From Pristiophorus japonicus (taxonomy: Eukaryota), in the NCBI RefSeq assembly GCF_044704955.1, contig NC_091995.1:17794001-17858000 (forward strand): DNA of 64,000 nucleotides, read 5' to 3'. The notes beneath the pieces were generated by a model. It was not told the DNA's origin. It made no database searches and saw only the letters and a list, made by a program, of their open reading frames with translations. Within the stretch, counting starts at the first letter, position 1. Each line of letters begins with the position of its first letter. Shown piece after piece: positions 1,750-60,679 of this stretch. Both the position numbers and the translations under genes were made by a program.

Positions 1750-1792
1750 CGGAGAACATAGTGCTTTCCCAGGAAACTGCAGCCCAATTCAT
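1750..1792 (-). CDS. Leader exon of a second gene-A paralogue (rest lies left of the window)
   Basis: MNWAAVSWESTMFS G|GTAAGC, 43 nt, inside the block paralogous to 58531-59990. Confidence 0.72.
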
Positions 1793-16025: not shown

Positions 16026-16033
16026 TCTGTGGA

Positions 16034-19000
16034 CCAATGGTAGAGCTTTGGAGGCGTGGCCTATTCAGTTGGAGCTCTGCTGTTCTGAGAGAAGGAACTC
16101 CCTGCTGAAGCTCCTGTCTGGAAAGCCTGGAGTGAGCCCTGTGAAACAGCCCAGGAAGAGGAGGAGGAGGCTTTCTACATTCCAATCCATCCAGAGGGAG
16201 AGGAGGAGAGCAGAAAACTCAACAACTTTAATACTGCTACAGAGAGTTGGAGCGAGGGGAAAAATAAACAACTATCCAGTGTGGAAGGAGGGAGAAACTT
16301 CATCAACTAAAGATGGGTGTGTTTTGGTGCATTCTCCGAAAGACTTTGTTGTATCGGTGGGGGGAGGAAAGAAGATATCTCGAGGGCCGGAACATCACGG
16401 GGGGTGTGTGTGTGTGGAAGTGTGTGTGGGGTTCTTGCTTACAGCTAGGCCCCACACACCACTGAAGCACCCCTCCCCCATTGCCTAGCCTGGGATAGCT
16501 GGAGCTACCTGTCTGAAGTAGTAATAATCACCCTATTAAACATCGTTGGAAGTGTGTGCCTGGGTGGCTCCAGCTACCCCAGGTGAAGACATCTTCTCCC
16601 CCCATCCGAAGACCATTCTACAAAGACTGTGTTTTTTGCCATCTGGGGCGTGCACCCCAAGAAACACCCACCCATCGCTGTGAGGGGAGACCTGCCCTCG
16701 CAGCTTCCCTCTTTCCCACCCCCTCACACTTTCTCTCTCGCTCTGTCTCTCCCCTCTCTCTCTGAGAGCCCTTTCCTCCTAATTATTAAACAATTAAGAC
16801 AACTGAGTAGAGGGAGCAAGGCCCCTCCCCATTCGTTAACTAGCGAAGAGGTGTGCCCCATTAAGAGCTCCCTCTGCTCAAAACACCAACGAGGCCAATT
16901 AAAGACCATTAAGGCCTGTGACTTTGGGGTGGGTGTAGCCCTTAAAGGAACCCCGTGATGGCGACCCCATCCACACCGGTGGCAGGGCCAGCTAGGACAT
17001 ATGCGCAGGCGGCGTCCACATCCATGGCGCCTCCTGCGCCTCCTGCTGCCCTGCCACCATTCAGACTGATAACAAAAAAACACGGGGTCAAGAGCTACAC
17101 TCACCCCACAATGAGCATTGAGGAGTGCGTGCAGGTGATGGCTGGGGTAGTCGGCCCCTCGGCCATTGTCGCAGCCTCCAAGATGTCTGGGAAATCTGTG
17201 TTCTTCTTGGGGTTGGAGCGGGCGGTGTCCTTGGCCCTCGAAAAGGGGCTCACGGTGGGCGGGACGTTCCTGCCGGTGGACCCTCCCAAGGCCACCGCGC
17301 AGAGGGTCATCCTTTCAAATGTCCCGCCCTTTGTTCCCGCTGGGCTCCTCCTCCCTCAGCTACACCAACTGGGGGAGGTAAGGTCAGGGATCAACCCCAT
17401 ACCGCTCGGCCTCAGGGAGAGCAGCCTGCGCCATGTGTTCTCCTTCCGCCGCCAGCTTTTTGTCTGGCTGGCACGGGAGGAGACGACAGAGGGCAATTTT
17501 CATGTGGTGCACGAGGGGACTGCCTACTGCGTCTTCTGGACGTCGGACAGCGTGCGGTGCCATGCCTGTAGGGAGGTGGGGCACGTTCGCAAGAACTGCC
17601 CCGCCTCCAAGGCCGCCAAACCACCGAGGGCGGCCAAGGCTGGCGCCGCCGCCACCCCTCCCCCTAGTAGCGTCCGTGTGCTGGGAGCCGTAGGTGCACG
17701 GGCATCGTCGGGGGCCTTTGTTTTCACGGCCTCCGGCGGGGTGGGGAGAGGGAGAGCATCCAATCGGAAGGAAGGCGCACAGGAAGGCGAAACATCTCGG
17801 GGCGGGACCCCTCAGTGCGCCAGACAGCTTGAACACCGCGCTCAGCCCAACCCTGACACGGCGAGCGCGTGGTGCCCTGAGCCCGTGCCCGAGCCATTGA
17901 CCAATATCACAGAGGGGCTCGGGCGTGGGCAAGAAAAGAAAAAGGGGGGGGGTGGAGCGGGAGGCCTCGGCAGACATGGAGGTCTCCCTGCCTCCGCGCA
18001 CCCCCAGGAACAAAAGGAGGCGACGCTCCAATGAGGCGTAGAGGGAACAACTTCCCTCCGCGGAGGAGTCAGTGCCTGCCGCGTGTCCCGCGTCCACTAC
18101 CAGTGACCCCAAACTGCGCTGTAGGCGAGAGGAGTCTGTCCCCGGGGAGGGTGAGACAGTCGAGGCTGCCCAGCCTCTGCCTCCTGGGGATGGCATGGAA
18201 GATCTGCCTGTCGTGGGGGCCGTGGGTCCAGCGGAAGAATGCGTTGCCGCCGGGTCGAGTGTCCCGGGAACTGATGCGGGCGGGGCCGAAAAGGCCGAAT
18301 CTGAGCCCGCCCAGTTATTAACCAACTTCCCCCGGGAGTCGCTCGACCCGGCAGAAACTGAAAATGCTAATAATTTTACAGAACTTCCACACGCTGGGCC
18401 AGGGGGTGGCGGCGTGGAGGGGGAAGAACAACAACCCTCGTCCCCTACTTTGGAGCTGAGGTACTTGGAGGACCTGGAACATTACTTTGGCCAGGTCTCT
18501 CCGTGTTCCCCGGTTCCTGGGGCGGAGGAGGAACCCATTCCGCTGTCGCTTCCTGACCCAGCACCACTTTTAAAAGAGCCTAGTGGGGACTCCTCTGCCG
18601 ACGATCCTGGGGGTGGGATCGGGGCAGAGACAGGGTCGGATGGAACGGCCGGGCGGTTTGCCATACCTCGTGTGGTCGACGGTCCGGCTGCTGGCAGCGA
18701 CCTCCCGGAGGGGGACGGGGACTCGGTGGGGGACGAGGGAGAAGATCTCAGTCCATCGCCAGTGAGGCGGTGGATCTCCTTGTGCCCGCCGCTGAGTCCC
18801 CCCTCATTCCTGCAAAGGAACTCCGGGACTTTTTGGTCCAGAGCCAGGGTCGCCGCAACCAAGCCCATCTGGCCCTGGAAAGATGGTCCGAGCCGGGGCT
18901 GCTCATCGCGTCCGTCCGCGCCGCCGCTAAAACCATGGCCGCGGGTGGGCCCTTATCAAATGTGCAAGGCCTTGAGCTGCGCCAGTTCAAAAGGTTCCTC

Positions 19001-20260
19001 GCTGGGCTGCTGAAGGAATGGAGGTCAACAAACGACTCCACTCCCTCCCCACAATAGGTTAGGTAGAGGTTGCACTATGCTTTTGTCATGAAGATAACCA
19101 TAGCCAGCCTCAACATCAACGGCGGCAGAGAGTCACACCATAGATTTCACAATTTTTCGCTCCTGCAAGAGGGGAAATATGCGGTGAGCTTCCTGCAAGA
19201 AACCCACACCGTTCCGGGAGACGAAGCCACGTGGCTCCTGGAATGGCAAGGAGAGGTCCGCATGAGCCACCTCACTACCACTTCTTGTGGGGTGGCCATC
19301 TTGTTGGCCCCGCATTTTCAGCCAGAGATCTTGGGGGTCGAGGAGCCCGTGCCAGGCCGCTTGCTGCACGTCACGTTTCGCCTGGGGGACATGCCGCTCC
19401 ATCTCGTGAACGTGTACGCCCCTCAGCCCGGCCTGCAGCAAACGCGCTTCTTCGAAGAAGTTTCCGCTCTTCTTGGGTCCGTCGACGTCGGCGACTGCAT
19501 TGTCCTCGGGGGGGATTTTAACTGCACCCTCGAGGTGAGGGACGGCTCCGGTGCCCCACAGAGCATGTTCGAGAAGTTGAGGGACCTGGTCAGGTCCTTC
19601 GACTTGGTGGACGTCTGGCGAAATCTCCATCCCGACTTCAGTGCCTTTACTTGGGTGAGGCCTGGAGTAGGATGATCCAGAGTCGACCGCCTTTACATGT
19701 CTCGGGCGTACGTTTCCTGCGTCCCGGCGGCCTCCATGCAGCCGGTGCCGTGTTCGGTCCACCACCTGGTGTGGACGGAGCTCGCTTTGCTCTGCGCGAG
19801 GACGGGGTCCGCGTACTGGCATTTTAACAACCAGCTGCTGGAGGACGTGCGGTTCCAGGACTCGTTCCGTCGTTTCTGGGCCGACTGGAGAAGGAAGCAG
19901 GGGGGCTTCCCCTCCTTGAGGCTATGGTGGGACGTGGGCAAGGCTCACGTCTGCGTCTTCTGTCAAGAGTACGCGAGGGGGTCGACCAAGATGCGGGCGG
20001 CCAGGGTTTGATTTTATATTTTAAAGTTTAATTTGTTTTAATTGCCGGTATTTTTAGTGTCCCCCTCCCCTTCTATAGGGGGCACTTGGAGGAAAAATAT
20101 ATGATTTTAGTGCCCAAAAAAAAACTTTAAAAAAAAACAAAAACACAAAAAAATAACAAAATAAAAACACCAAAAAGGGGCCTTGTAAATGTTTGGTGTG
20201 CCCCCCAGATCGGGGGGACACGATTTAAGAATTCATGTTTTTGTTTCCTCCCAAAAGAGT
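16034..20260 (+). mobile_element. Tx1-type non-LTR retrotransposon, internally deleted (5'UTR, ORF1, APE endonuclease, 3'UTR; RT missing)
   Basis: ORF1 at ~16958 with TYAQA, LSNVPP and CHACREVGHVRKNC knuckle. ORF2 at 19088: MKITIASLNING, LQETH, NVYAP, GDFN, WHFNNQLL; joined to the 3'UTR at ~20007. Confidence 0.88.
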
Positions 20261-23149
20261 TCTGTGGACAAGCAATCCAAGGTCCCCTTGTTCATCTACA
20301 TTGCTAATTGGCTACCATTTAATGTGTGTATTCTTTCCTTATTAGCCTTCCCCAAGTGCATTACCTCACACTTCACTGAATTAAATTCTATTTGCCACTG
20401 TTCTGCCCATCTGACCAGTAGATTGATATCCTCCTGCAGTGCATGAATTTCCTGTTCATTATTAACCACAAAGACAAATTTAGTGTCATCTGCCAACCTT
20501 CATCACACCACCTCTATTCAAATCTAGATTATTGATGTATACCACAAAAAGGAAGGGACCCAATGCTGTGCCCTACGGAACCCCACTGGAAACATCCTTC
20601 CAGTCACATAAACATCCATCAAACATTACCCTTTGCTTCCTACCTCTGATCCAATTTTGGATCCAACTTGCCATTTTTCCCTGGATCCCATTGGCTTTTA
20701 CCTTTGTGACCAGTCTGCCATGTGGTACCTGATCAAAAGCTTTGCTAAAATCCATATACACTACATCGTACACACTACCTTCATCGATCCTCCTGGTTAC
20801 CTCCCCGAAAAATTCAATCAGGTTAGTCAAACACGATCTTCCCTTAACTGTCCCTGATTAATCCTTGCCTTTCAAAATTTTCCTGCCTTCAGGATTTCTT
20901 CCAATAATTTTCCCCGCATTGAGGTTAGACTGACAGGCCTGTAATTACTCGGCCTATCCCTTGCTCCCTTCTTAATCAATAGTACCACATTAGCAGTCCT
21001 TCAGTGTTCCTGCACTATGCCTGAATCCAAAGAGGACTGGAAAATGACGGTTGTGGCCTCGGCTATTTCTTCTTTTGCCCTGCTCACCAGCCTGGGATGC
21101 ATTTCTTCTGAGCCTGTGGAATTATCCACTTTCAAAGCTGCTAAACCCATTAATACCTCCACTCTCACTATGGTTATTTCATGCAGAATTTCACACTCCT
21201 CCTCGATAGCAGTAACAGCATCGCCCCTTTCCTTTGTGAAAACAGACACCAATTTTTCCTTAAAATCCATACCCACATCTTCCGCCTCCACACACAGATT
21301 ACCCTCATGGTCTCTAATAAGCCCTGCCCTTTCTATAGTTAGCCTCTTGCTCTTAATATCTTTATAGAAGATCTTTGGGTTTTCCTTGGTTTTACTTACC
21401 AAGAATTTTTCATGCTTTCCCTTAACATTCCTCATATCTTTTTTAATTTCACCTCTCAACTTTCTATATTTTGAAGATATTCTTCAGAATTTAGCCGTCG
21501 GTATATGACATAAGCTTCCTTTTTTTCTTTATCCATCCCTGTGAGTCCCTAGACTTCCAGGGATTTAGAATAATTATTCCCAGCCGTTTTCTTTAAGGGC
21601 ACGTGTTTGGCCTGAGCCCTCCGGATCTCCTCCTTGAATGCCTCCCATTGTTCCGACATTGATTTACCTTCAAGTAGCTGGTTCCAGTCCACTGTGGCCA
21701 AATCACTTCACAACTTACCAAAGTCTTTCCTTGTCTTTATCAATAACTACCTTGAATCTGACTGAATTATGGTCATTGGCACCAAAGTGCTCTCCCCCTG
21801 ATACCCCTTCCACCTGCCCAGCTTCATTCCCCAAAAGTAAATCCTGAACCGCCCTTTGCCGTGTTGAGCTTGTTAGATACTGACTAAAAAAACTTCTTGG
21901 GTGCATTTTAGGAATTTCACACCCTCTATACACTCTATACCCTTCACAATATATTTGTCCCAATCAATATTAGGATAGTTATAATCCACTATATTACTCT
22001 CCCATGGTTTTTGGACTTCACAGAAAATTGCTCTTCTATCTCACTCCCATTTATTGGGGGTCAAAATACATGTCCAGCAGTGTGATCGCCCATTTTGTAT
22101 TTTTCTGTTCAACCCATATGGCCTTATTTGATGATCCCCCTTCACATCTGTAATAATTTTTTTAATCAATACCGCCCCCCTCCTTTTTACACCCCTTCCT
22201 GTCTTGTCTAAAATTCCTGTAACCAGGAATACTGAACTGCCAAACCTACCGCTCTTTCAGCCATATCTCTGTAATGGCTATAATGTCACACTTCCAAGTT
22301 TCTACCTGTGCTCTCAGCTCATCAGCCTTATTTGCCATACTCTTTTTCATTTAGCACAGGAAGACCTCCATGAGTACTACTTACTAAGCCTTGTTTCCTC
22401 TGTATTACAGATTCACGTTCTACATTCTTGCTTTCCAATTTCAGCCTTACTTCCCTCATTATTGATTGTGATCTCAGGTTCCCATCCTCCTGCTAATCTA
22501 GTTTAAACTCTCCCCAACAGCACTAGCAAAACTCCCTGCGAGGAAATTAGTCCCAGCACGGTTGAGGTGCACAGCTCCTATCTCCCCCAGAAGCATTCCC
22601 AATGCCTCAGGAATTTAAAGCCCTCTCTCCTGCACCAACCATCCAGCCATGCGTTCATCCTCTCTCTCCTTCTATTCTTGTACTCATTAGCACGTGGCAC
22701 CAGTAGTCATCTGTAGACTACTAACTTTACGGTCCTACCCTTTAATTTTTCTTCTAGCTTCCTAAATTCTGCCTACCTATGTCATTGTCCCAATATGGAC
22801 CATAACCTCTGGCTTTAACACTGTCCCGTCAGAATGCCCTGCATCTGCTCTGTGACATCCTTGACCCTGGCATCAACGAGGCAACATGCCATGCTGGAGT
22901 CACGTTCACGGCCATAGAAACGCCTCTCTATTCCCCCAACTATTGAATCCCCTACCAGTAAAGCTCCTTTATGCTTTGTCGCTCCCCTGTGTGCAGCTGA
23001 GCCACCCATGGTGCCATGGACTTGGCTCTCGCTGCACTTCCCAGAGGCACCATAACTTTCACCGGTGCTCAGAAGAGGCTCGCAACTGGAAAGCGAGATG
23101 GACTCAGCGGGTGTGGGGGGAGGGGGAGAAGGGGGGGGGGTTGAATCCT

Positions 23150-24018: not shown

Positions 24019-24076
24019 ATGCAAACTATTCACATATGGACGATCATGAATTTAATGACAATATTGCTTCATTTCG
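24019..24076 (+). CDS. Gene B exon 1: signal peptide
   Basis: ATG CAA ACT...CAT TTC G|GTAAGT = MQTIHIWTIMNLMTILLHF + phase-1 G; perfect donor; 58 nt. Confidence 0.75.
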
Positions 24077-24740: not shown

Positions 24741-25190
24741 CAGCTGTGGCTCAGTGGGTCCCACCCTCACCTCCGAGTCAGATATTTGTGGGTTCAAGTC
24801 CCTGTCCAGGGATCTGAGCACAAAATCAAGGCTGACACTCCAGAGCAGTGCTGAAGGAGTGCTGCACTGACGGAGGTGCTGTCTTTCGGAATTAACGTTA
24901 AACCGATGATCCATCTGTTCTATCAGGTGGATGTAACAGATCCCATGGTACTATTTCGAAGAAAAGTTGGGAGGTTATTCCCAGTGTACCTGGGTCAGTA
25001 TTTGTCCCTCAATCAACTTAACAAATAATCTGGTCATGATCACATTGCTGTTTTTGTGAGTTTGCTGTGCGCAACGTGACTGCCACGTTTCGCACATTAT
25101 AACAGTGACTACGTTTCAAAAGTACTTAATTGGCTGCAAAGTGCTTTGAGACGCCCGGTGGTCGTGAAATGTCCTCTATAAATGCAAGCT
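24741..25190 (+). mobile_element. tRNA-derived Deu-domain SINE (SacSINE1/AmnSINE-like)
   Basis: A box tggctcagtgg, B box ggttcaagtcc, Deu core gcactg.cggaggtgc.gtctttcgga, L2-like tail tataaatgcaag. Confidence 0.8.
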
Positions 25191-25589
25191 GAGGACATTC
25201 AGGTTGTTTCATCATTTTAACTATTGAATTCTGTTTGAATTTTACACATTCTCCAGTCACCAATGGTTAATAGAGAGATCACTGTGGTGTTTAGCATCTA
25301 TGTGACTTTCAACCTTTTCAGACTAATAAGATTAAACTTGCTCTCGCTTTCTGGAGCTGATTTTGAATTTGTGGGACGGGCGATATTGGATTAACCACCC
25401 GTTGTATACCTGGACCCGATTTCAACTGCAGGCAGCTGATCCAATCTCACCCGTTTTTCAACCTAAAGTTGGAATGACACCCAAATGCAAGAGCGCATCG
25501 GGTGAAGCGTTTAATTCAAGATTCCCAGTTCTGACCCTCGCTCAAAGTGTTAGAGAGATCTGAGGGTAGCGCAGAAAGCATATTAACAT

Positions 25590-26200
25590 GCAGTTACAGC
25601 AAGCGAAAAAGCAAATGGTATGGTGGCCTTTAGTACAAGAGGATTTGAGTATAAGAATAAAGACGTCTTACTGCAATTAAATAGACCACACCTGGAGTAT
25701 TGTGTACAGTTTTGGTCTCCTTACCTAAGCAAGGTTATATTTACCTTTGAGGTAGTGCAACAAATGTTTACCAGACTGATTCCTGGGATGAGGGATTGTC
25801 CAATGAAGAGAGATTGAGTGGACTAGGCCTATATTCTCTAGAGTTTAGAAGAATAAGAGGTGATCCTACAGGGCTTGATCGAGTAAATGCAGGGAGGATT
25901 TTTCCTCTGGCAGAGAAATCTAGAAACCGGGGTCAAAGTCTCAGAATAAAGAGTCGGCCATTTTGGACTGAGATAAGGAGAGACTTCTTCACTCAGAGGG
26001 TGATGAATCTTTGGAATTATCTACCTCAGTGGGATGTAGAGGCTCTATCTTTGAGTATATTGAAGACAAAGATCTATAGATTTTTGGATATTGAAGGATC
26101 AAATGATGTGGGGATAGTACGGGAGAGTGGAGTTGATGTAGAAGATCAGCCATGACCTCACTGAATGGCCTACTCCTGCTCCTAATCCTTATGTTCTAAT
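25590..26200 (+). mobile_element. CR1 3' fragment
   Basis: RPHLEYCVQFWSP, FFTQRVMNLWN. Confidence 0.8.
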
Positions 26201-26816
26201 TTTATTATAAAGATCAAGCCGGCACAATCGGGAGTACTGAAATTAAAATTAATGATTATTCTTTGGAAAGGGGCAGAGGTACTTTGTACCAGATCCATTC
26301 TGTACTTGACCTAGGAGTGCAACCGAAATTGAAAGGCACTCCATTTCCAGCTCCAATATCCCTCAAGTTAACCATTTATACCTCTTCTCGACTCATCTTT
26401 TGCTTCTTTACTTCTGCCATTACTATTTCCTTATGACTTGCATTATCATCCCTTTTGTCAGTTAATCTCTCCTGCCTTCCACCCTGTCGCAGACCATCCC
26501 GTTTGTTCTTTATTCCCCTCCCCTCTTTCACTGCCCCCTGCACCTGCTTAAAACCTGACACATCTTTACCTGTTTCCAGTTCGGGTTAAAGGTAATCGAC
26601 CTGGAACGTTAACTCTGATACTCTGTCTCCACAGATGCAGCCTGACTAATTGACTATTTCCAGAATTTTCTATTATTATACCGCCAATTAAAGATCATTA
26701 ATATGTCAGCATAAATCCTCAGAACAATATTTGATTGAAACCAGTCCTTCTGCGCCGTGTTTTAAGGCAATCACGTGCACTGCTTATTTATATATCGTCT
26801 GTTTACCCACTTGCAG

Positions 26817-27167
26817 CAACTACTGTTGGAAATATCACAGTATTTCAGAACCCGCAATCGCTCACCAAAACCGTGGGACAGACAGCGGACCTGGTCTGCA
26901 CATATGAGGGTACCGATGGAGTTGGCAGCTACAGTTGGCACCGAGGTTCCAAACAGGGAATTGAAGTTTCCAACAATACAGTGCAATACAGTGGCAGGGT
27001 GATGTTGGCAAGTAGAGAGGATTTCCGCCAGTTGAAAAACGCGTCCATTAGAATAATCCAACTGAAACCGGAAGATACAGGGATCTATTTTTGCAAAGTG
27101 CAGCTTGTAGGAATCGCTGCTGCATACGGACCTGGCACAACACTGAACGTGAGGCGTGGTGATGAAG
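26817..27167 (+). CDS. Gene B V1 exon: VJ-type Ig V domain (NCR3/NKp30-like, gene-A type)
   Basis: Acceptor tttacccacttgcag|, donor gaag|gtaagt, 351 nt, phase 1-1. Encodes ITVFQNP..LVC..YSW..GRV..DTGIYFC..YGPGTTLNV. Confidence 0.92.
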
Positions 27168-27329
27168 GTAAGTTTGGATTGGTGGAGTTATTCAGGCGAA
27201 TTAAATTGCACGCAATCATATGCTATTTTTCTAGGGAGTAATATTGGCGCGAAAGGTAAATGATCCATCAAGTCAATTGGAACTCCAAAACCCGCGACCT
27301 CCACCACCTCGAAGGTTAAGGGCAATAGG

Positions 27330-28140
27330 TAGAAACATAGAAATATAGAAACATAGAAAATAGGTGCAGGAGTAGGCCATTCGACCCTTCGAGCCTGCAC
27401 CACCATTCAATAAGATCAGTACCCCTTTCCTGCTTTCTCTCCATACCCCTTGATCCCTTTAGCCATAAGGGCCATATCTAACTCCCTCTTGAATATATTC
27501 AATGAACTGGCATCAACAACTCTCTGCGGCAGAGAATTCTACAGGTTAACAACTTTCTGAGTGAAGAAGTTTCTCCTCTTCTCAGTCCTAAATGGCCTGC
27601 CCCTTCTCCTAAGATTCTGCCCCCTGGTTCTGGACTTCCCCAACATCGGGAACATTCTTCCCGTATATAGCCTGTCCAGTCCAGTCAGAATCTTATACGT
27701 TTCTATGAGATCCCCTCTCATCCTTCTAAACTCCAGTGTATAAAGGCCCAGTTGATCCAGTCTCTCCTCATATGTCAGTCCAGCCATCCCTGGAATCAGC
27801 CTGGTGAACCTTCGCTGCACTCCCTCAATAGCAAGAACGTCCTTCCTCAGATTAGGAGACCAAAACTGAACACAATATTCCAGATGGGGCCTCACCAAGG
27901 CTCTGTATAACTGCAGCAAGACTTCGCTGCTTCTATACTCAAATTCCCTTGATATGAAGGCCAACATACCATTTGCCTTCTTCCCGCCTGCTGTACCTGC
28001 ATGCCAACTTTCAATGAATGATGAACCATGACACGCAGGTCTCGCTGCACCTCCCCTTTTCCTAATCTGCCGCCATTCAGATAATATTCTGCATTCGTGT
28101 TTTTGCCCCCCAAAGTGGATAACCTCACATTTATCTACAT
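27330..28140 (-). mobile_element. Young CR1 3' end in gene B intron
   Basis: (ATAGAAAC)n tail and RT C-terminus; absent from the inverted paralogue at ~57.7 kb. Confidence 0.88.
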
Positions 28141-29835
28141 ACATGGGGACACCACCACCTGCATGTTCCCCTCCAAATCAAACACCATCCTGACTTGGCC
28201 TTCTGTCGCGGTTACTTTCAAAACCTGGAACTCTCCCAAACAGCGCGGTGGGAGCACTTTCACCTCACGGACTGTAGCGGTTCAAGAAGAAGGCCAACCA
28301 GCACCTTCTCAAGGGCAATTTTGGGAGTGCAATACAAGGCGGCCTCGCCAGTGACGCCCAGATCCCGAGAGTGATTTTTTTTTGGAATAAATAAATGGAG
28401 GATATTCATAAAAATCAGTTGTGTATAATTTTAGGTAGGACTATAGACAATTATTCAACCCAGTTACAGTATTCAAGGCGAAGAGCAACACCTAAGCCTT
28501 GTAATTGCAGCGTGCCAATATTAGGAATAAACAGGTCAACACATCTATAAGTTAGATTTCACTGCCATCCTGTAAACGGAGATAGAGGCAGATAGAGTTG
28601 TGTGTGTAAATAGGAATTAATACATTGCACTCCATCTAAATGAATGCAACGATGGGTCCACGAAAGAACCACATTGACTACCCAGATTCGGCCATCTAAT
28701 ATCTGGATGGTCGTTTTGTCTTAAGCATCCCATAATTATGAGGGGACAATTTTCTCGTTCGTGCTCAGGGCCGCGTACATCTCCAGGGTCTAGGGAATTC
28801 AGGAAAAGTCGGCGGGAGGAGGAATACTCTCAAGATATTAAGGGGAACAGATAGGAAAGATGGAGATAAACTATTTCAGCTGTTTGGGGATTCTGGGACC
28901 GGGGGCATAGTCTAACATTTAGAAGCAGACTTTTCAAGAGCGAAATTAGAAAATTCTTCTCCACATAAAGGGTGGTAGAGGTTTGGCACTCTCTTTCATA
29001 AATGGCAATTGTAAATTTAAAATCTGTGATTGATAGCCTTTTATTCAACAAAGGCACTAAGGAATATGGAGTTAGGTTGCAAATCAGCTGTGATCTCAAT
29101 GAATGGCGGAGCAGGTTTGAAGTGTTAAATGGCCAAAACCTTTTCCTATGGTAACGGAACTCCACCAACCACCCCCCACCACCCCTCACATCCCATCCCA
29201 TTTAAAATAAATTAAAGTGGCACGAACCTATTAAGCTTCTCTACATTAAAATTCTCCCAGTGTTACTTCAGGGGTAGGAACATGTCCACTTGACCACCGG
29301 TGACATATTGCATTTTAATCGATGTCCTAGTTTTATGTATGCCAGTGTTAAGTATGAATCCGCATCCGGTGATCGTGAAAAATGCTATATAAATATTTAT
29401 TTAATAATTGCTCGCTAAATACTGTCTTATCAGTACTCTTCCTGGATTAGTATTTTAAATAACATGTCACTTATTGACAGATCAATATTTCTTTCTCCAG
29501 AAACGCATGTTGTCCCTTGAATCTATTTCTACTGCCCACACTAACGACCACCTCCAGTAACTTTTTCTACAAATCTATTACAATTTAGGCGTACCACCTG
29601 TCTTTCCTTCTTGCCTGTAGCTTGTTCATCGACAAGTTAATTAAATTGATTCATTGAATTCAAGACATGTGACACATTTTGCGCAGGCATATTGATCCTA
29701 TGTATTGCAATGAACAGACCATTAATTTGTGATATTGAATGATATTTTAAGATGAGCTTCAACTCTCCAGACAGAACTAAGTACTGGTCTGTAAATCTGT
29801 AGGAAATATTAAAGATTACTCCATTTATACTCCAG

Positions 29836-30174
29836 ACAGTGGGTTGATGAGTGGGATCAGAGTGTTCCAGACCCCGGGAGTGATTCACATAACAGAAGGT
29901 GGATCGGTGCAATTTAACTGCACTTTCGAAGCGAATGGCTCTTTCGGAGAAGTTATTTGGAGGCGGGCCTCGCAAAACCTGGAAGTGTCGGATCAGAATC
30001 TTTTCTATCAGAACCGGATAATGAAATCAGGTTCGCAATTATTTTCCCAAAAAATGGCTTTTCTTAAAATCATCAATTTATCGAATATGGACTCGGATGT
30101 TTACTACTGCGAGGTGAAAATTCCGTCGGATGGGAAAGGAAATGGGACAGGGACACAACTTACAGTAACTGACA
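29836..30174 (+). CDS. Gene B V2 exon: VJ-type Ig V domain (NCR3/NKp30-like)
   Basis: Acceptor ccatttatactccag|, donor a|gtgagt, 339 nt, phase 1-1. Encodes IRVFQTP..EGGSVQFNC..VIW..AFLKIINL..DSDVYYCEV..GKGNGTGTQLTV; the EGGS..C and GxGNGT motifs are typical of the NKp30 family. Confidence 0.92.
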
Positions 30175-31419: not shown

Positions 31420-31790
31420 GTCTCAATGTACTGAGGGAGCTCTGCACTGTCAGAGGTGCTGTCTTTCAGATGAAACTTTATGCCGAGGCCCTGTCTGCTC
31501 TATCAGGTGAACGTAAAGGATCCCATGGCATTCTTTCAAAGAAGAGCAGGGGTGTCTTCCAGATGTCCTTGCCAATATTTATCGCTCAATCAACATAACA
31601 AAAGCAAATTAGCTGGTCATTATCACTTTGCTGTTTATGAGAGTTTGGTGTGTGCAAATTGGCTGCCGCGTGTCTTACATTACAACAGTAACTACACTCC
31701 AAAGAAAGATACTTCATTGGCTATAAAGCAGTTTGGAACATCCGGACTTCATGAAAGGCGCTATATAAATGCAAATCTTTCTTTGCTCGG
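31420..31790 (+). mobile_element. Deu-domain SINE (5'-truncated)
   Basis: Core plus aaaggcgctatataaatgcaa tail. Confidence 0.75.
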
Positions 31791-32299
31791 TGATGATTGA
31801 CTAATACAAATATAGTGTACTGGCCTAATTATTTTTAAAAGATTGTTTCTGGCCAAATTTGGAAAACGAGATTGATAAACAGAGTTGGTGTTGTTTTGTA
31901 TTAAGACACCACGGATTCTTTGCACACACATTTCTTAGAGGGCTTGGCAGGGACGATGTTTCCTATGGCTGAGGTGCCTAGAACCGTGATTACAGTTTCA
32001 AAATAAGTGGTCGGCCATTTAGGACTGAGATGAGGTGAAACGTCTTCACTCAGGGGATGGTGAATCTTCGGAATTCTCTACACCAGAGGGATGTGGAGCT
32101 CTGTCTTTGAGTATATTGAAGACAGAGTTTGCTAGATTTTTGAATATTAAGGCAATCAAGGGATATGGGGGCAGTTCAGGGAAGTGGAGTTGAGGTAGAA
32201 GATCGGTCATGATCTTATTGAACGGTAGAGCAGGATTGAAGGACCAAATGGCCTACTCCTGGTCTTAATTTTAGCTTATAATGCTTAAACAACTCAACG

Positions 32300-32820
32300 G
32301 CTGTGGTGGGATGCTTACTGCGTTCACCAGCACTTTGGGCGGCTGCATTTCAGATGTGAGCCACTGGTCATCTGTAGAGAAAGCGTCAATATATTGGTCA
32401 GTCACTAGCTTCTTATTGGCAAGCTTTATATATTTATTTGGGCTTTAACATGTACGAATATTTAGTTGCTCAAACTTTGTCCTTATGCAGAAATAAACAC
32501 ACAATGAAGTAACAGCGTAAATCAAGGCATTATTTCAACTATGTTGCATTGCTTATTTTGCAATGAATCCTCCATTTCTATAGTATAAGCCTGTTATCTT
32601 TCGGCGAACTTTATATATATATATATATTGCATCTACATATAATATATATATATATGGCACGTTAAAGGTTCTCCTCGAAGCAGGTGCTGACAATTTCTA
32701 TTAAGATACTAGCAAATTATTGGGGCTTTTCAAAATTGACTTCTGGAAATAAATTAACTCGCGGGCTCCTTAAATGTGTTATATATGAAATTATCTGACA
32801 TATTATACCTTCTACCTTTA
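32300..32820 (+). pseudogene. Decayed paralogue of the gene B 5'/leader region
   Basis: Aligns by eye with 23935-24430 (ctgcgttca.cagcacttt, tcagatgtgagc, aaataaattaa). The leader coding part is largely deleted and the donor ggtaagtcact has become ggtcagtcact. Confidence 0.65.
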
Positions 32821-33114
32821 CGCAGCAAGTCGTTAGGATCTGAAATGCACTGCCTGAAATTGTAGAGGAGGCAGACTCAATCATTGCTTTCAAAAGGGAA
32901 TTGGTTAAGTATCTGAAGGAAAAACATACAGGGCTACCGGGAAAGGATGGAGAGTGGGACTAGCTGAAGTGCTCTTACTGAGAGCCAGCATGGGCTCGAC
33001 ATGCCAAATGACCGCCTTCTGTGCTATTACCATTCTATGATTCTATAATTCTATATTGACATGTAATTCTGTGGGTAATTATTGACAGATTGCATTGTTC
33101 CGTTTATACTCTAG

Positions 33115-33277
33115 ACAGTGTGCTGATGAGTGAGATCAGAGTGTTCCATTCCCCAACTGCCATTCATGTAACAGAAGGTGGATCGGTGCAGCTGAAGTGC
33201 ACCTTCCAAGTGGATGGTTCTGTCGGATTAGTTGGTTGAAGGCTGGAATCACAAAATGTGGAGGTCACGGATCATAA
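33115..33277 (+). pseudogene. Truncated V3 pseudo-exon (paralogue of V2)
   Basis: ctctag|ac..: DSVLMSEIRVFHSPTAIHVTEGGSVQLKCTFQVDGSVGLVG*RLESQNVEVTDH. The core Trp codon is TGA, and the 3' half is missing at a repeat insertion. Confidence 0.85.
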
Positions 33278-33900
33278 AATACGCGGATGCTGGAAATCTG
33301 AAATCAAAACAGAAAATCTGTGGAGAAAAAGAAGACTTAAATTAATATGACACACTACTTCACTACCGGATGCCTCAAAGTGCTTTACAGACAATGAAGT
33401 GCTTATGAAGTTTAGTCACTGTAGTAATGCAAGAAACACGGCAGCTAATTTGTGCATCGCAAGCTCCCACAAACAGCAATGTGATAATGATCAGATTTGT
33501 TTTATTTATGTTGATTGAAGAAAAAATATTGGCCAAGATAGAGGGGATAACTCCCCTGCTCGTCTTCTCAATAGTGTTTTTACGTCTACCTGAGAGAGCA
33601 GACGGGCCCTTGGTTTAACATCTAATTCGAAAGACAGCACCTCTGACAGTACAGCACTCCTTCAGTACTGCACTTGAGTGTCAGCCTAGATTTATGTGCT
33701 CAAGTCCCTGGAGTGGGACTGTTAACCCACAACCTTCTGACTCAGAGGCTAGAGTGCTATCCACTGAATCACAACTGGGGGAAACAGAGTTAACATTTCA
33801 GGTTGCTGACGAAGGGTCAGCCACCTGAAATGTTAACTGTTTCTATGTCCACAGATGCTGCTAGGCCTGCTGAGTATTTCTAGCATTTCCTGTTTTATTA
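33277..33900. mobile_element. Palindromic Penelope-like terminal fragment (33277-33330 and 33780-33900)
   Basis: gatgctggaaatctgaaat..aaacagaaaat and its inverted counterpart; related copies at 26570-26680, 51630-51800 and 58385-58470. Confidence 0.5.
33335..33777 (-). mobile_element. Deu-domain SINE nested in a Penelope-like repeat
   Basis: cgaaagacagcacctctgacagtacagcactccttcagtactgcact. Confidence 0.75.
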
Positions 33901-34060: not shown

Positions 34061-34182
34061 GATCTACAGTTGAGATTATCTGCCATTTCCCCACACTCAA
34101 TGTTGGATTACAAGTCGCAAAAATGGTACTGCTGATCATTCTCATAATCACAGGCCTAACGATGCATTCTATCCTACGTTGA
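34061..34182 (+). CDS. Stalk/TM terminal exon with intramembrane Lys and no tail (activating type)
   Basis: Strong acceptor attgcttttgtttctgacag|, phase 1: (R)STVEIICHFPTLNVGLQVAKMVLLIILIITGLTMHSILR*. Confidence 0.78.
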
Positions 34183-40750: not shown

Positions 40751-41040
40751 TGACTATGGACAACGTGGCTGACCTGTATCATTGATGACATCACAATGAC
40801 TATGGACAACGCGGCCGATGTACATTATCAATAAGATCCCAATGACTATGGACAACGTGGCCGATCTGCATCATTGATGACATAATAATGACTAGGGACT
40901 ATGCGGCCGACCTGCATCATCAGTTCCATCACAATTACTATGAACAATGCAACCGACCTGGGTAATTGGTGACATCAGAATTACTGTTGATACCAGAGCA
41001 CAGCCTGCATCATCAGTGATGTTACACGGACTATTGACAA
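40751..41040. repeat. 46-bp tandem repeat, about 6 diverged units
   Basis: tgactatggacaac.. units start at 40751, 40797, 40843, 40889, 40935 and 40981. Confidence 0.85.
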
Positions 41041-51160: not shown

Positions 51161-51280
51161 TCACGGCTCCGCTTCCTTCGCCAAAGCGTACAGCACCGCT
51201 TCTCGATTCACGGGACACTCTATTTGATTGCTCTCATGCAGATTCAGCGTGGCGTATTGCAAATTGCCATCGCCCTTTTC
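51161..51280 (-). CDS. Gene A terminal exon with ITIM(s)
   Basis: Acceptor ctttcatctcaatag|, phase 0: EKGDGNLQYATLNLHESNQIECPVNREAVLYALAKEAEP*. LQYATL fits (I/V/L)xYxx(L/V); VLYALA is ITIM-like; minus-strand AATAAA downstream. Confidence 0.8.
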   Translation of the reverse strand, partial: EKGDGNLQYATLNLHESNQIECPVNREAVLYALAKEAEP

Positions 51281-56267: not shown

Positions 56268-56369
56268 CTCTCTTACAACGCCGGCTGATAACAACGACAA
56301 TGACTATAACGATGATCAGGAGAGGCGAGGCTCCCGCTGCAAAGACGCCGTTGCTGCTCTCTCCACAAT
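56268..56369 (-). CDS. Gene A exon 3: stalk and uncharged transmembrane segment
   Basis: Acceptor tttacatttacacacag|, donor ag|gtaaaa, 102 nt, phase 1-1. Reads (Y)CGESSNGVFAAGASPLLIIVIVIVVVISRRCKR: hydrophobic run, basic stop-transfer, stalk Cys. Confidence 0.82.
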
Positions 56370-57893
56370 CTGTGTGTAAATGTAAAGGTTCCTTGTGAGA
56401 CAAAGGAGCCATGGCAGGGTAACGTTCACATTGAGATTGAGGATCAGTAAATGTGACAGAGATTCCAATCCCCTTTGACATGCTGGTCTAAATTCATATT
56501 TAACACTTGCATACATCAACAAGACAACTGATGAAAATGCATAATATCATCGATGGTCAACACCTTTGAAGTAACACTGAGAGAATTTTAATGAAGGGAC
56601 GCTTAATAGGTGGGTGCCAATTTCCATTCTTTTAAATGGAATGTGTGTATTGGTGGGGGGGGGGGGGGGAGGGGCGCCCGTGTGAGTTCCCTTATCATAG
56701 GAACTGGAAGAGGCCATTTTTCCCCTCAAGCCTGCTTCGCCATTCAATGAGGTCATGACCGACTTGCAACCTAACTACATATCCCTTAATAACTTTGTTT
56801 TAAAAAATGCTATCAATCACAGATTTCAAATGTACAATTGACTCAGCAACGATTGCCATTTGCGGAAGAGAGTGCCAAACTTCTACCACCCTTTGTTTGC
56901 AGAAATGTTTCCTAATTTCACTCCTGAAATGTCTGGCTCTAATTTTTAAATTATGCCGCCGGGTCCTATAATCCCCAAACTGTTGAAATAGTTTCTCTCT
57001 ATCTACCTCTCTGTTCCCCATAATATCGTGAGAGTGTCGCTCCTCCCGGCGAGCTTTCCTGAATTCTCTAGACCCAGGAGATCCATTCGGCCCCAGTACT
57101 AACGAGAAAATTGTCCGTTCGTATTTACGGGATGCTGCAGACAAAACAATGAGTTGGATATTAGATTGCCGTAAATGGATGGGCAACGAGGTCCTATCGT
57201 GGACCCATCTTTGCATTTAGATGGAGCGCAATGTGTTAATTTCTATTTACACGCACAACTATATCTGCCTCGATCTCCATTTATAAGATGGCAGTGAAAT
57301 CGAACTTATCATAGACTTGTTAATCTGTTTATTCCTAATATTGGCACGCTGCAATTTAAAGGCTCACGTGTTGCTCTCCTTAATGGGCTGCAGTTGTCGC
57401 CTTACATACTGTAACTAGGTTGACTACTTGTGCATAGTTCTACCTAAATGATACATAATTGAACGTAATTAGTATCCTCCATCGATTTATTCTAAAAAAA
57501 TAATTCTCAGGATATGGGTGTCGCTGGGGAAACCTGCATTGATTGCCCATCCTAAATTGCCATTGCGAAGGTGGGCCTTCTTCTTGAACCGCTGCAGTCG
57601 TGAAGTGAAGGTACTCCCACAGCGCTGTTAGGAAGGGATTGCCAGGGATTTGAAAGGAACGTCGATATAAGTCCAAGTCAGGCTGCTGTGTGACTTGGAG
57701 AGGAACTTGGAACTTGGGCTGCTCCCATGCACCTGCTGCTCTTTTCCTTCTAGGTGGTGGAGGACACGGGTTTGGGAGTACCAATTGATCTAGTGGATAC
57801 TGTGTCTATACTGCCAATATTACTCCCTAGAAAAATCCCACATGATTGCGTGCAATTTCATTGGTAAGAATATCTCGACCAATCCAAACTTAC

Positions 57894-58241
57894 ATTCTTC
57901 ACCACGTTTCACGACCAGTATTGTGCCGCTTCCGTAAGCAACACCGATTCTCACGAACTCCACTTTGCAAATATAGAAACCTGTATCTCGCGGGCCCAGT
58001 TGGATTATTCTAATGGATGCTGTTTTCCTCTGACGGAAATCCTCTTCGTCTGTCCGGAACACCCTTCCTCTGTATTCGTCTGTACTGTTGGAAACTTCAA
58101 TTCCATGTTTGGAGCCTCGGTGCCACTTGTAGCTGCCGATTCCTGCTGGACCTTCATATGTGCAGACCAGGTCCACTGTCTGTCCCACGGTTTTGGTGAG
58201 AGATTGCGGGCTCTGAAATACGGTGATATTTCCACCAGTAA
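57894..58241 (-). CDS. Gene A exon 2: VJ-type Ig V domain (NCR3/NKp30-like)
   Basis: Acceptor ttttgcccacttatcacag|, donor |gtaagt, 348 nt, phase 1-1. Encodes ITVFQSP..LVC..YKW..GRV..ASIRIIQL..DTGFYIC..YGSGTILVV (both Cys, core Trp, D-x-G-x-Y-x-C, J-like GxGT). Confidence 0.92.
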
Positions 58242-59843
58242 CTGTGATAAGTGGGCAAAAGAGACCATTTATAAATAGGCAGTGCACGTCTTTGCTTTAC
58301 AATACTACGTGAAGAAGCTGGTTTTAAACAAATATTGTTCTGAGGAATTTTGACCAGGTATTAATGATCTTTAATTGGGGGTATAATAAACAGAAAATGC
58401 CGGAAATACTCAGCAGCTCGGGTAGCATGTGTGGAGAGAGAGCAACAGAGTTAACGTTCCAGGTCGATAGCATTTTGCCAGACCAATGTCTGTGATAGTT
58501 GGAAGGCAGGAGAGTATAATTCACAAAAGGAATGTTGATGCAAGGCATAAGGAGATGGTAAAGGGACAAGTAAGGCACAAAAGGAGTGTCTAGAAGTGGT
58601 GTAAATGGTTAACTTGAGGTTTATTGGAACTCGAAATGGAACGGCTTTTGATGATGGGTACATTCCCAGGGCAAATATAGCATGGATCCGGTAAAAAAAA
58701 AGTACCTCAACCCTTTCCAAATAAAAAGCATTAACTTTAATCTATGCACTCCTGATTATGCCGCCGTGATATATACATAAGAAAATATGAATATAAGGAT
58801 TAGGAGCAGGAGTAGGCCAGTCGGCCCATCGAGCCTGCTCCACTATTCAATAAGATCAAGGCTGATCATCGACCTCAATTCCACTTTTCCGCCCTATCCA
58901 CATATCCCTTGATTCCCTATGACTCCAAAACTCTACCTATCTCATTCTTGAATATATTCAGAAACTGAGCATCCACAGCTCTCTGGGGTAGAGAATCCCA
59001 AAGATTCATGACCCTCTGAGAGAAGAAATTCCTTCTTATTTCCGTCTTAAATGGGCGACCCCTTTTTCTGAAACTATGCCCCTAGTTCAAAATTATCCCC
59101 GAGTGAGTTAGCCCCACGCCTTTCTCCCATATCTCTGCAATATTTTCTTTCAAGTATTTGCCCATATTCCCTTTTGATGGTTGCTATTGAATTTTTATCC
59201 ACTACCTTATCAGGCAGAGTACTGCGGCAGTATGTACTTCAGGGAGCAAAACACATCGTGCTCTCCTGGACCAAACACAATAAATCTAGTTACCCGAGAG
59301 CCGATCAGTCTCTCATCTTTTAGCTGTAATCTCTCGCGATCTATTTCAGTCTCACTTCCTCTCACACATGCGTACGTACAAGTATGAATGGAACCCATTT
59401 CTCTTTGTGTGTTTTATGCATAACGTTCTCCTCAACTCTCTTTTCCCATTCCTAACCATCAATTCTTGATTTACTTTGTCTTCTCTTGCCTTGGTGTTGT
59501 CCTGCGCCATGGGCCATTGGCCTTTCAGCGAAATGCCCCAGTCCAAAAAAAGCAACATCGAAAGATAACAGATAGCAGAATAAGATTGAACCAGGTTCAC
59601 AGATGATCTAGTAAACATCAGAAAAAAAGTGAGGACATTGCTATCGGTAATTAATAACGAATTAAGTAATGCAATATTTCATTAAAGTCATTGTGAAATC
59701 AATAGAAATGATAATCAGTCCCTCTCAATAACAGCCGGCCACACCGCAGCGCCCGTTTCACTGCTAGGCGGCAAGTTGACAATCTCCCTTATATATTTAT
59801 ATAGACCTGATGTGTCAGAAATTGATATTAAAACGCTGCTTAC

Positions 59844-59886
59844 CGGAGATCATCGTGATTGCCCAGGTAACTGCAGCCCAATTCAT
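59844..59886 (-). CDS. Gene A exon 1: signal peptide of an NCR3/NKp30-like inhibitory receptor
   Basis: ATG AAT TGG...TCC G|GTAAGC = MNWAAVTWAITMIS + phase-1 G; 43 nt; strong donor; phase matches the V exon; paralogous copy at 1750-1792. Confidence 0.8.
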
Positions 59887-60670: not shown

Positions 60671-60679
60671 TCAGGGGCA

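What the first reader, a model, noticed from the sequence alone, without database searches (positions are those of the whole stretch)
26213..29360. Exon shuffling caught in the act: the inhibitory gene's V exon copied, inverted, into intron 1 of the opposite gene
Seen: 26213-29360 is the reverse complement of ~56490-58770. It covers the V exon and flanking introns but stops about 120 bp short of gene A's TM acceptor and excludes A's leader. V2 begins with DSGLMSG, which reads like the end of a signal peptide, and the decayed paralogue at 32.3-33.3 kb goes from leader directly to a V2-type exon with no V1. Both block ends abut repeats (a CR1 tail and a SINE/L2-like tail). Inference: gene B was L-V2 and gained V1 from the A lineage. 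This would be a direct way to give an activating or soluble receptor the ligand-binding domain of an inhibitory one.
Basis: partly seen in the sequence, partly recalled or inferred. Interest (0 to 1): 0.8.

Follow-up and report, generated by a model that had tools for sequence, protein, structure and literature searches.

The report
Borrowed V exon, shark NKp30 gene
A shark immune-receptor gene of the NKp30 family carries, inside its first intron, an old back-to-front copy of the sensing-domain exon of a neighbouring family member; this is a textbook kind of exon shuffling, and whether the copy is used in the messenger RNA could not be checked.

Summary
The inverted repeat is real. Window 25925-29359 (+) matches 59087-56492 (-) at 69-81% identity. 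The match is broken only by an 810-bp LINE fragment present in the + copy alone. It carries an Ig V exon (V1, 26817-27167) and both flanking introns, and excludes gene A's leader and TM exon.

Gene B's leader and V2 are orthologous to single-V NKp30/NCR3-like proteins of 10 other elasmobranch species, where the leader joins the V2-type domain directly. V1 is sister to A's V inside a separate, also single-V, clade.

"Caught in the act" fails. The copies differ by about 20-24% and a LINE has landed since.

"Activating or soluble" is unproven. B-type relatives carry tyrosine-motif tails. No B-type TM or tail exon is detectable here, only a candidate Lys-TM exon at 34061-34182.

V1 keeps its frame, its splice sites and phase 1-1, and has no indels. 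Its replacements avoid family-invariant positions, which suggests use. No RNA run was listed, so inclusion in transcripts is untested.

This is a new example of a known process.

The parts
24019..24076 (+). Gene B leader exon (MQTIHIWTIMNLMTILLHF + 1 base, donor GTAAGT, phase 1)
   Evidence: Leader scan and sequence. 16/19 identical to the leader of the Heptranchias perlo B-type protein P0157.
25583..26210 (+). LINE 3' fragment in B intron 1. Its last ~290 bp (25925-26210) are part of the A/B homology.
Evidence: Multi-copy in the window. A's counterpart 58773-59088 is shorter. Junction alignment.
25925..27330 (+). Left arm of the inverted block (matches 59087-57731)
   Evidence: blastn 69-80% identity. 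MAFFT identity profile.
26817..27167 (+). V1 exon: A-type VJ-type Ig V domain, 351 nt, phase 1-1, acceptor ...cttgcag, donor GTAAGT
   Evidence: Sequence. Pfam V-set E 4.7e-13. 81.2% nt and 82/116 aa identical to A's V, with no indel. Sister to A's V in the tree.
27331..28140 (-). LINE fragment inserted into the B copy after the duplication
   Evidence: Absent from A in the alignment. 82-86% identical to five other window copies.
28162..29359 (+). Right arm of the inverted block (matches 57709-56492). It contains a shared LINE tail ending near 29148.
   Evidence: blastn 76.1% over 1250 columns. Sharp right edge. Internal repeat tail.
29836..30174 (+). V2 exon: B-type VJ-type Ig V domain, 339 nt, phase 1-1, donor GTGAGT. 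If the donor is not used the frame stops two codons later.
   Evidence: Sequence. Pfam V-set E 4.5e-10. 64% identical to Heptranchias P0157. Keeps 30 of 34 columns invariant in 9 relatives.
32286..33277 (+). B' pseudogene: promoter and leader remnant (47-nt deletion removes the ATG), ~0.7-kb intron with no V1-type exon, and V2' with an in-frame TGA, cut by a repeat
   Evidence: blastn and alignments.
34061..34182 (+). Candidate terminal exon (phase 1): ...GLQVAKMVLLIILIITGL... then a stop. A Lys-bearing TM with almost no tail.
   Evidence: TM scan and sequence. Weak likeness to the TM of P0089 and the N-terminal half of P0159 (44% over 18 aa, E 0.2-0.6 in a 161-protein set). Not verified.
59844..59886 (-). 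Gene A leader exon (MNWAAVTWAITMIS + 1 base, donor GTAAGC), outside the block
   Evidence: Sequence. Matches the leaders of A-type proteins P0107, P0101 and P0011.
57894..58241 (-). Gene A V exon (348 nt, phase 1-1)
   Evidence: Sequence. Pfam V-set E 4e-10.
56492..59087 (-). A-side copy of the block
56268..56369 (-). Gene A TM exon (102 nt, phase 1-1, uncharged TM), 122 bp beyond the block
   Evidence: Sequence. TM scan.
51161..51280 (-). Gene A last exon with LQYATL and VLYALA tyrosine motifs
   Evidence: tblastn with the P0107 tail, 66% over 32 aa, E 1.6e-9. Sequence.

Best explanation
The window is part of a cluster of NKp30/NCR3-family receptor genes in a cartilaginous fish. Earlier notes of this scan name the species as the Japanese sawshark.

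Gene A (minus strand) is an A-type member: leader, one VJ-type V exon, an uncharged TM and a tail with tyrosine motifs. Gene B (plus strand) belongs to a different, old subtype that in other sharks and rays is leader-V-TM-tail.

Long ago a DNA segment of about 2.6 kb from an A-type gene was copied in inverted orientation into B's intron 1. The segment held the V exon and parts of both flanking introns, but neither the leader nor the TM exon. That put a complete, phase 1-1, splice-competent A-type V exon (V1) between B's leader and B's own V exon (V2), on the coding strand. This much is shown.

Inferred: V1 is, or for most of its history was, spliced between leader and V2. That would give a two-V protein that joins the ligand-binding domains of two NCR3 subtypes. 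The protein would end either at the stop just after V2's donor (a soluble form) or in the candidate Lys-TM exon at 34061-34182.

The copying mechanism is unresolved. It was a DNA-level segmental copy in a repeat-rich intron, with no sign of retrotransposition.
For: Block and edges.

Recipient identity and polarity:
- The whole-library HMMER search with V2 found 200 proteins at E<=0.001. Its closest hits by identity (P0002 61%, P0004 54%, P0005 53%, P0007 52%) have one V domain.
- The word search with P0002 added Heptranchias, Scyliorhinus, C. plagiosum, Ginglymostoma and Mustelus.
- 10 species have B-type proteins. In the 6 that show a leader at the N-terminus, the leader abuts the V2-type domain.
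- B's leader is 16/19 identical, and V2 64% identical, to the Heptranchias protein.
- The neighbouring B' has about 0.7 kb between its leader remnant and V2', with no V1.

Donor lineage:
- V1 and A's V are sisters (91/88) inside a 6-row A-type clade (100/99) with single-V proteins of 4 galeomorph species.
- V2 lies in a 10-row clade (96/95) on the other side of the deepest split (IQ-TREE on 38 rows). FastTree on all 231 domain rows gave the same neighbours.

Signs of use of V1:
- The open frame and the AG/GTAAGT sites are intact.
- The exon has 0 indel events in 351 aligned nt, against 22 in 1846 nt of flanking intron.
- V1 and A's V changed equally against 4 outgroups (9-11 vs 8-11 unique changes).
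- V1 differs from A's V at 8 of 52 family-invariant columns against 23 of 60 variable ones (Fisher p 0.010).
- No other leader candidate was found between 24.1 and 26.8 kb, or between V1 and V2.
Against: - No transcript evidence. No RNA run was listed, so read laying could not be used.
- No sawshark protein containing V1, V2 or A's V turned up in three word searches covering lengths 92-294, 132-437 and 147-469 aa. No public gene model supports the splice.
- dN/dS between V1 and A's V is 0.76 (dS 0.264, dN 0.200). I did not test it against 1. I expect the difference is not significant.
- The exon is barely better conserved than the introns (81% vs 76-80%).
- Under strict neutrality the frame stays open in 27% of simulations with half the observed changes. 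The case for constraint is therefore suggestive, and for the V1 branch alone it is not significant.
- No B-type TM or tail exon is detectable in the window (tblastn; best profile hit E 0.69). The sister copy B' is dead. V2 has lost 4 of 34 invariant residues. B may itself be a decaying fragment.
- Most orthologue proteins are computed models, which could miss a cassette exon.
Confidence: 0.6

Rival explanations
1. V1 is an unused intronic relic. The inverted copy landed in B's intron 1 but is never, or no longer, spliced in. B makes leader-V2 only, or B is itself a truncated pseudogene like B'.
For: - dN/dS is 0.76, and the exon is only slightly more conserved than its introns.
- An open frame is kept in 27% of neutral simulations with half the changes.
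- No B-type TM or tail exon is in the window.
- B' is a pseudogene.
- No sawshark protein model contains V1 or V2.
- No RNA run was listed.
Against: - The exon has no indel in 351 nt, against one per 84 nt in the introns.
- Both splice sites and the phase are kept.
- V1 is no more changed than A's V against four outgroups, and keeps 45 of 52 invariant columns against 44 for A's V.
- Replacements avoid invariant columns (p 0.010).
- Multiplying the rough neutral odds (open frame 0.27, no frameshift about 0.24, few hits on invariant columns about 0.1) gives well under 1 in 100. The terms are crude and may not be independent.
Confidence: 0.32
2. The ancestral gene was V1-V2. A lost V2, and B-type genes elsewhere lost V1.
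For: Multi-V relatives exist in the wider family, for example P0008, P0020 and P0024.
Against: - B-type proteins of 10 species and A-type proteins of 4 species are single-V.
- V1 is sister to the same genome's A V, not to an old first-domain lineage.
- A's leader and B's leader are unrelated, and each matches its own orthologues.
- The homology includes intron and a shared LINE tail at about 20-24% divergence, far younger than the A/B subtype split.
Confidence: 0.03
3. The block was moved by a LINE (transduction or template switch) rather than by DNA-level duplication.
For: - Two sense-oriented LINE tails lie in the block, one at its left edge.
- The copy is short, inverted and 30 kb from A.
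Against: - The right edge (29359) is about 200 bp past the internal LINE tail.
- No shared flanking word longer than 6 nt was found at three candidate left edges, so there is no target-site duplication.
- The left LINE fragment is longer in B than in A, which does not fit a 5'-truncated retrocopy of A.
Confidence: 0.05

Closest known systems
Shark NCR3 (NKp30) family genes: Kinlein et al., Immunogenetics 2021;73:333. I saw only the reference-list entries; the paper is not held. What it says is recalled.
   Same: - A non-rearranging VJ-type V domain in one exon, with a G-x-G-T-x-L-x-V end.
- Several divergent subtypes.
- The nearest named relatives of both V1/A (P0101, QTT61898.1) and V2 (P0161) are nurse-shark entries called 'natural cytotoxicity triggering receptor 3'.
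   Different: Here two subtypes' V exons lie in one transcription unit. Among the 231 domain rows (228 from 133 proteins, plus the 3 window domains) I found no natural protein with an A-type V before a B-type V. The two that pair types (P0011, P0159) have a TM and tail, or a second leader, between the domains, which I read as merged gene models.
Exon shuffling of symmetric phase 1-1 Ig-domain exons (general principle, recalled; mentioned for VJ and C1 domains in PMC10751288, passage seen)
   Same: A whole domain exon with intron flanks was copied into an intron of another gene, with matching phase.
   Different: Inclusion in mRNA, which defines a completed shuffle, is not shown here.
Paired activating/inhibitory receptors that exchange ectodomain exons (KIR, Siglec-5/14, SIRP; recalled, no call)
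   Same: An inhibitory gene's ligand-binding exon turns up in a neighbour that may have a charged-TM ending.
   Different: The exon was added to the recipient's own V domain and did not replace it. The activating ending is only a candidate exon.
LINE-mediated transduction of exons (L1 3' transduction; recalled)
   Same: A short block that contains LINE tails.
   Different: The defining edge at a LINE 3' end and the target-site duplication were looked for and not found.

Membership tests
NCR3/NKp30 family (shark subtypes) | Ig V-set domain encoded by one exon | tested here: met
   Pfam V-set for V1, V2 and A's V. Each is a single phase 1-1 exon.
NCR3/NKp30 family (shark subtypes) | Germline-joined J-like end (G-x-G-T-x-L-x-V) | tested here: met
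   By eye: YGPGTTLNV in V1, YGSGTILVV in A's V, GNGTGTQLTV in V2. The motif definition is recalled.
NCR3/NKp30 family (shark subtypes) | Closest relatives are proteins named NCR3 | tested here: met
   P0101 and P0161 (nurse shark NCR3), and P0002/P0151 and P0162 (NCR3-like). Tree. Some relatives are auto-named SIRP-like or SHPS-1-like.
NCR3/NKp30 family (shark subtypes) | Linkage to the MHC | not testable with these tools
   The window holds no MHC gene that I identified, and no tool reads the rest of this genome.
Completed exon shuffling | Donor exon with flanking intron copied from another gene | tested here: met
Completed exon shuffling | Insertion inside an intron of a recipient whose relatives lack the exon | tested here: met
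   B's leader and V2 are orthologous to single-V proteins. B' lacks the exon.
Completed exon shuffling | Phase compatibility and intact splice sites | tested here: met
   The leader donor is phase 1. V1 is 351 nt and V2 339 nt, both phase 1-1, with AG and GT kept.
Completed exon shuffling | The new exon is present in mature mRNA | not testable with these tools
   No RNA run was listed, so read laying was unusable. No protein model was found.
LINE-mediated transduction | The copy ends exactly at a LINE 3' end and is flanked by a target-site duplication | tested here: not met
   The right edge is about 200 bp past the LINE tail. No flanking repeat longer than 6 nt.
Paired activating counterpart | Charged residue in the TM and a short tail, in the same transcript as the ectodomain | tested here: inconclusive
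   Candidate exon 34061-34182 has a Lys in the hydrophobic stretch and a stop after ...HSILR. Its likeness to known TMs is weak. Its linkage to V2 by splicing is untested.

The most novel reading that the evidence does not exclude
B is a working gene whose product is leader - V1 (A-type) - V2 (B-type) - Lys-bearing TM. That would be a natural two-headed activating receptor, joining the binding domains of two anciently separated and elsewhere single-V, tyrosine-motif-tailed NCR3 subtypes. It would be a documented first step from single-V NKp30-like genes to the multi-V receptors common in sharks.
Probability: 0.2. Interest if true: 0.6.

Novelty: new member of a known kind. Interest (0 to 1): 0.38.

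Why it matters
NK-type receptor families change quickly. How new domain combinations arise is usually inferred from finished products. Here donor, recipient, an unmodified sister copy (B') and single-V orthologues in other elasmobranch species can all be lined up, so the polarity of a V-exon gain can be read directly.

If V1 is spliced in, it shows how a single-V NKp30-like gene becomes a multi-V receptor, and how an inhibitory gene's binding domain can be passed to a neighbour with another kind of ending. If V1 is not spliced in, this is simply a fossil of segmental duplication in a repeat-rich cluster.

Tried and rejected

Whether intron 1 of B-type genes in other sharks holds an A-type V exon was judged from proteins only.

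Public gene models of this species. Word searches with the V1 ORF, P0002 and P0107 returned no sawshark protein with these domains. The length windows were 92-294, 132-437 and 147-469 aa, so shorter or longer models would be missed.

B-type TM and tail exons. tblastn with eight, then three, relatives and a profile of seven C-terminal parts against all stop-to-stop ORFs of at least 12 aa found nothing better than E 0.69.

LINE-transduction mechanism. Rejected on the edges and the lack of a target-site duplication.

A larger duplicated unit. The colinear SINE-like repeat plus LINE tail in B, upstream of B' and upstream of A's V looked like one. The spacers share no homology, so I left it unexplained.

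Pfam on the repeat ORFs. This gave RVT_1 only for 54028-54372.

Papers. Kinlein 2021 and Flajnik 2012 are not held. Searches 'NCR3 + shark + NKp30', 'NKp30 + exon shuffling' and 'Pristiophorus japonicus + genome' found no paper on a two-V NCR3 gene or on this locus. Paper supplements were not consulted.

Joined model. I did not search or fold the spliced protein (leader+V1+V2+TM).
Full report
OBSERVATION

The window has no N. An inverted repeat links 25.9-29.4 kb with 56.5-59.1 kb. The repeat finder reports arms 26802-27330 and 57731-58259, 529 nt, 80% complementary. blastn of the window on itself gives three matches:
- 26595-27330 vs 58468-57731, 80.1%, E = 0
- 28162-29359 vs 57709-56492, 76.1% over 1250 columns, E = 0
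- 25930-26494 vs 59082-58488, 72.9%

A global MAFFT alignment shows 71-89% identity per 100 columns from 25905 to 29320. Identity falls to 32-51% beyond 29320 and before 25905.

The gap at 27331-28140 is a repeat found five more times in the window at 82-86% identity. It is absent from the A copy, so it inserted into the B copy after the duplication.

The right edge is sharp at 29359/56492. Both copies carry the same LINE 3' tail at the same junction, and the homology runs through it to 25925/59087. In A this LINE fragment stops at 59088, as all other copies of the repeat show. In B it continues without a break to 25583.

THE GENES

Three exons read as Ig V-set in Pfam. From the sequence:

| Exon | Coordinates | Length | Phase | Splice sites |
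|---|---|---|---|---|
| V1 | 26817-27167 (+) | 351 nt | 1-1 | AG acceptor, GTAAGT donor |
| A's V | 58241-57894 (-) | 348 nt | 1-1 | AG acceptor, GTAAGT donor |
| V2 | 29836-30174 (+) | 339 nt | 1-1 | AG acceptor, GTGAGT donor |

Gene A has these parts:
- a leader at 59886-59844 (MNWAAVTWAITMIS, donor GTAAGC), about 760 bp outside the block
- a TM exon at 56369-56268, whose acceptor lies 122 bp beyond the block
- a last exon at 51280-51161 with LQYATL and VLYALA

Gene B has a leader at 24019-24076 (MQTIHIWTIMNLMTILLHF, donor GTAAGT, phase 1). No other leader-like exon was found between it and V1, or between V1 and V2, with my scan thresholds.

A third A-type copy (A2) begins at the window's start. 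Its leader is at 1792-1750. Positions 1-2100 and 11886-14297 are direct copies of 58531-61079 and 61915-63779 at 77-83% identity.

WHAT THE FAMILY IS

The one whole-library HMMER search, with V2 as query, found 200 proteins at E<=0.001. Taking this search together with the word search using P0002, the closest relatives are single-V proteins of these species (names):
- Heterodontus francisci (P0002/P0151, 'natural cytotoxicity triggering receptor 3-like')
- Stegostoma tigrinum (P0005)
- Chiloscyllium punctatum (P0004)
- Pristis pectinata (P0007)
- Cetorhinus maximus (P0052)
- Heptranchias perlo (P0157)
- Scyliorhinus canicula (P0158)
- Chiloscyllium plagiosum (P0160)
- Ginglymostoma cirratum (P0161, named NCR3)
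- Mustelus asterias (P0159, a model that runs two genes together)

In the six proteins that begin with a leader, the leader MQT(I/V)... abuts the V2-type domain. B's leader is 16/19 identical, and V2 64% identical, to the Heptranchias protein.

V1 and A's V have other nearest relatives:
- nurse-shark NCR3 QTT61898.1 (P0101)
- Heterodontus P0107/P0162
- Scyliorhinus P0011, again a merged model
- C. punctatum P0126

All four have the leader M(H/D)W(A/I/V)AV(T/S)W, one V, and then a TM.

For the tree I cut 228 domains from 133 proteins of 800 aa or less and added the three window domains. FastTree on all 231 rows and IQ-TREE on 38 rows that I picked to cover both clades and other subtypes agree:
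- V1 and A's V are sisters (91/88) in an A-type clade of 6 rows (100/99).
- V2 sits in a B-type clade of 10 rows (96/95).
- The two clades lie on opposite sides of the deepest split (96/97).

So both genes belong to the shark NCR3 (NKp30) family described for the nurse shark. I could see that paper (Kinlein et al. 2021) only as a reference-list entry. Its content is recalled.

Earlier notes of this scan name the species as the Japanese sawshark and report many NCR3-family loci on this piece of the genome. I did not test the species name.

POLARITY

- B-type genes are single-V in 10 other elasmobranch species, and A-type genes are single-V in 4.
- The tandem sister copy B' (32286-33277) has only about 0.7 kb between its leader remnant and V2', with no V1-type exon.
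- V1 groups with the same genome's A-type V.
- The two leaders are unrelated to each other, and each matches its own orthologues.

The alternative, an ancestral V1-V2 gene with losses, would need many independent losses and is contradicted by the tree.

AGE

'Caught in the act' is not supported.

| Region | Identity | JC distance |
|---|---|---|
| V1 exon | 81.2% | 0.216 |
| Flanking introns | 76-80% | 0.23-0.29 |

A and A2 are closer to each other (77-83%) than either is to the B block over the shared stretch (72.9-73.3%). B and B' are about as far apart as the block copies (74-78%). A LINE fragment has inserted since.

On the protein tree the V1-to-A's-V path (0.41) is about half to two-thirds of the path from either to galeomorph A-type domains (0.58-0.80).

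IS V1 USED?

No sawshark protein with these domains was found. The evidence from sequence is indirect.

For use:
- The frame is open and both splice sites are intact.
- The exon has no indel event in 351 aligned nt, against 22 events in 1846 nt of flanking intron (15 of them not multiples of three).
- V1 and A's V have changed equally against four outgroups: 10/9, 11/8, 9/11 and 9/11 unique changes.
- They keep 45 and 44 of 52 family-invariant columns.
- They differ from each other at 8 of 52 invariant columns against 23 of 60 variable ones (Fisher p 0.010).

Against use:
- dN/dS is 0.76 (dS 0.264, dN 0.200). I did not test it against 1.
- The open frame survives in 27% of neutral simulations with half the 65 differences, and in 8.5% with all of them.
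- On the V1 branch alone the avoidance of invariant columns is not significant. This is my estimate from the counts.

I read this as moderate support for past or present use.

B'S ENDING

B-type relatives carry their own TM and tails with tyrosine motifs. By eye these are LTYAQV in Stegostoma and Ginglymostoma and LEYSTI in Heterodontus. The ITIM pattern I compare them with is recalled.

No such TM or tail exon is detectable in the window. If V2's donor is not used, the frame stops two codons later.

A candidate phase-1 terminal exon lies at 34061-34182. It encodes ...GLQVAKMVLLIILIITGLTMHSILR followed by a stop. It weakly resembles the Lys-bearing TM of P0089 and of the first half of P0159.

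V2 keeps 30 of 34 columns that are invariant in nine relatives. Those relatives keep all 34 of 34 to 42 when each is left out in turn. V2 is therefore slightly relaxed but not decayed. B' is a pseudogene.

MECHANISM

I found no target-site duplication. The right edge lies about 200 bp past the LINE tail inside the block. The left LINE fragment is longer in B than in A. LINE-mediated transduction is therefore not supported.

A DNA-level inverted segmental copy fits best. Either its left junction fell inside a resident LINE, or A's LINE fragment was shortened later. The true donor may be an A-type paralogue other than A.

COMPARISON AND VERDICT

Copying a symmetric Ig-domain exon into another gene's intron is the classic route of exon shuffling. 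Exchange of ectodomain exons between neighbouring inhibitory and activating receptors is familiar from mammalian NK and myeloid receptor clusters. Both statements are recalled.

What is new here is the particular case: two old NCR3 subtypes' V exons in one transcription unit. I did not see that pairing in any natural-looking protein among the 133 proteins whose domains I cut.

Searches for papers on it found none ('NCR3 + shark + NKp30'; 'NKp30 + exon shuffling'; 'Pristiophorus japonicus + genome'). The key family paper could not be read. Paper supplements were not consulted.

I did not search or fold the joined spliced model. Exons were searched apart.

Interest is moderate. The polarity is unusually well documented, but the process is well known, the event is old and expression is unknown.

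Noticed in passing
window 16000-20000: A GC-rich stretch (58-61% GC) that looks like the 5' part of a LINE. One ORF has a CCHC-like knuckle (16955-18034) and another starts like an AP endonuclease (19070-19675). Partial copies: 15383-15919 / 43779-44309 (90%) and 15779-16034 / 20007-20269 (92%).
   Followed up: partly
window 24741-25187, 31428-31784, 60226-60667 (inverted), with LINE tails at 25583-26210, 31947-32282, 59088-58773: A SINE-like repeat is followed three times, within 0.2-1.1 kb, by a LINE 3' tail in the same orientation: in B intron 1, upstream of B', and upstream of A's V. The spacers share no homology. This could be chance, a composite element or traces of an older duplication.
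   Followed up: partly
window 1-2100 and 11886-14297: A third A-type copy (A2) starts at the window edge. Its leader at 1792-1750 (-) reads MNWAAVSWESTMFS, with a Glu in the hydrophobic core. The stretches are direct copies of 58531-61079 and 61915-63779 at 77-83%.
   Followed up: partly
window 32286-33277: B' is a pseudogene. A 47-nt deletion removes the ATG and most of the leader. V2' has an in-frame TGA, and the exon is cut by a SINE-like repeat at about 33277-33336.
   Followed up: yes
window 34061-34182: A candidate terminal exon encoding a Lys-bearing TM with almost no tail. It could serve B, or once served B'.
   Followed up: partly
window 41323-41866: A tandem array of a 30-bp unit (18 copies; higher-order period 149 bp, 90% matches). 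A 46/92-bp array lies at 40751-40975.
   Followed up: no
window 51161-51280 (-): Gene A's last exon reads in phase 0 from its acceptor, while the TM exon ends in phase 1. At least one linker exon must lie between them. The second tyrosine motif is VLYALA, where relatives have VLYATV.
   Followed up: no
proteins P0011 (Scyliorhinus) and P0159 (Mustelus): Public gene models that run two neighbouring NCR3-family genes together: a TM and tail, or a second leader, sits between the two V domains. They mimic two-V receptors and should not be counted as such.
   Followed up: partly
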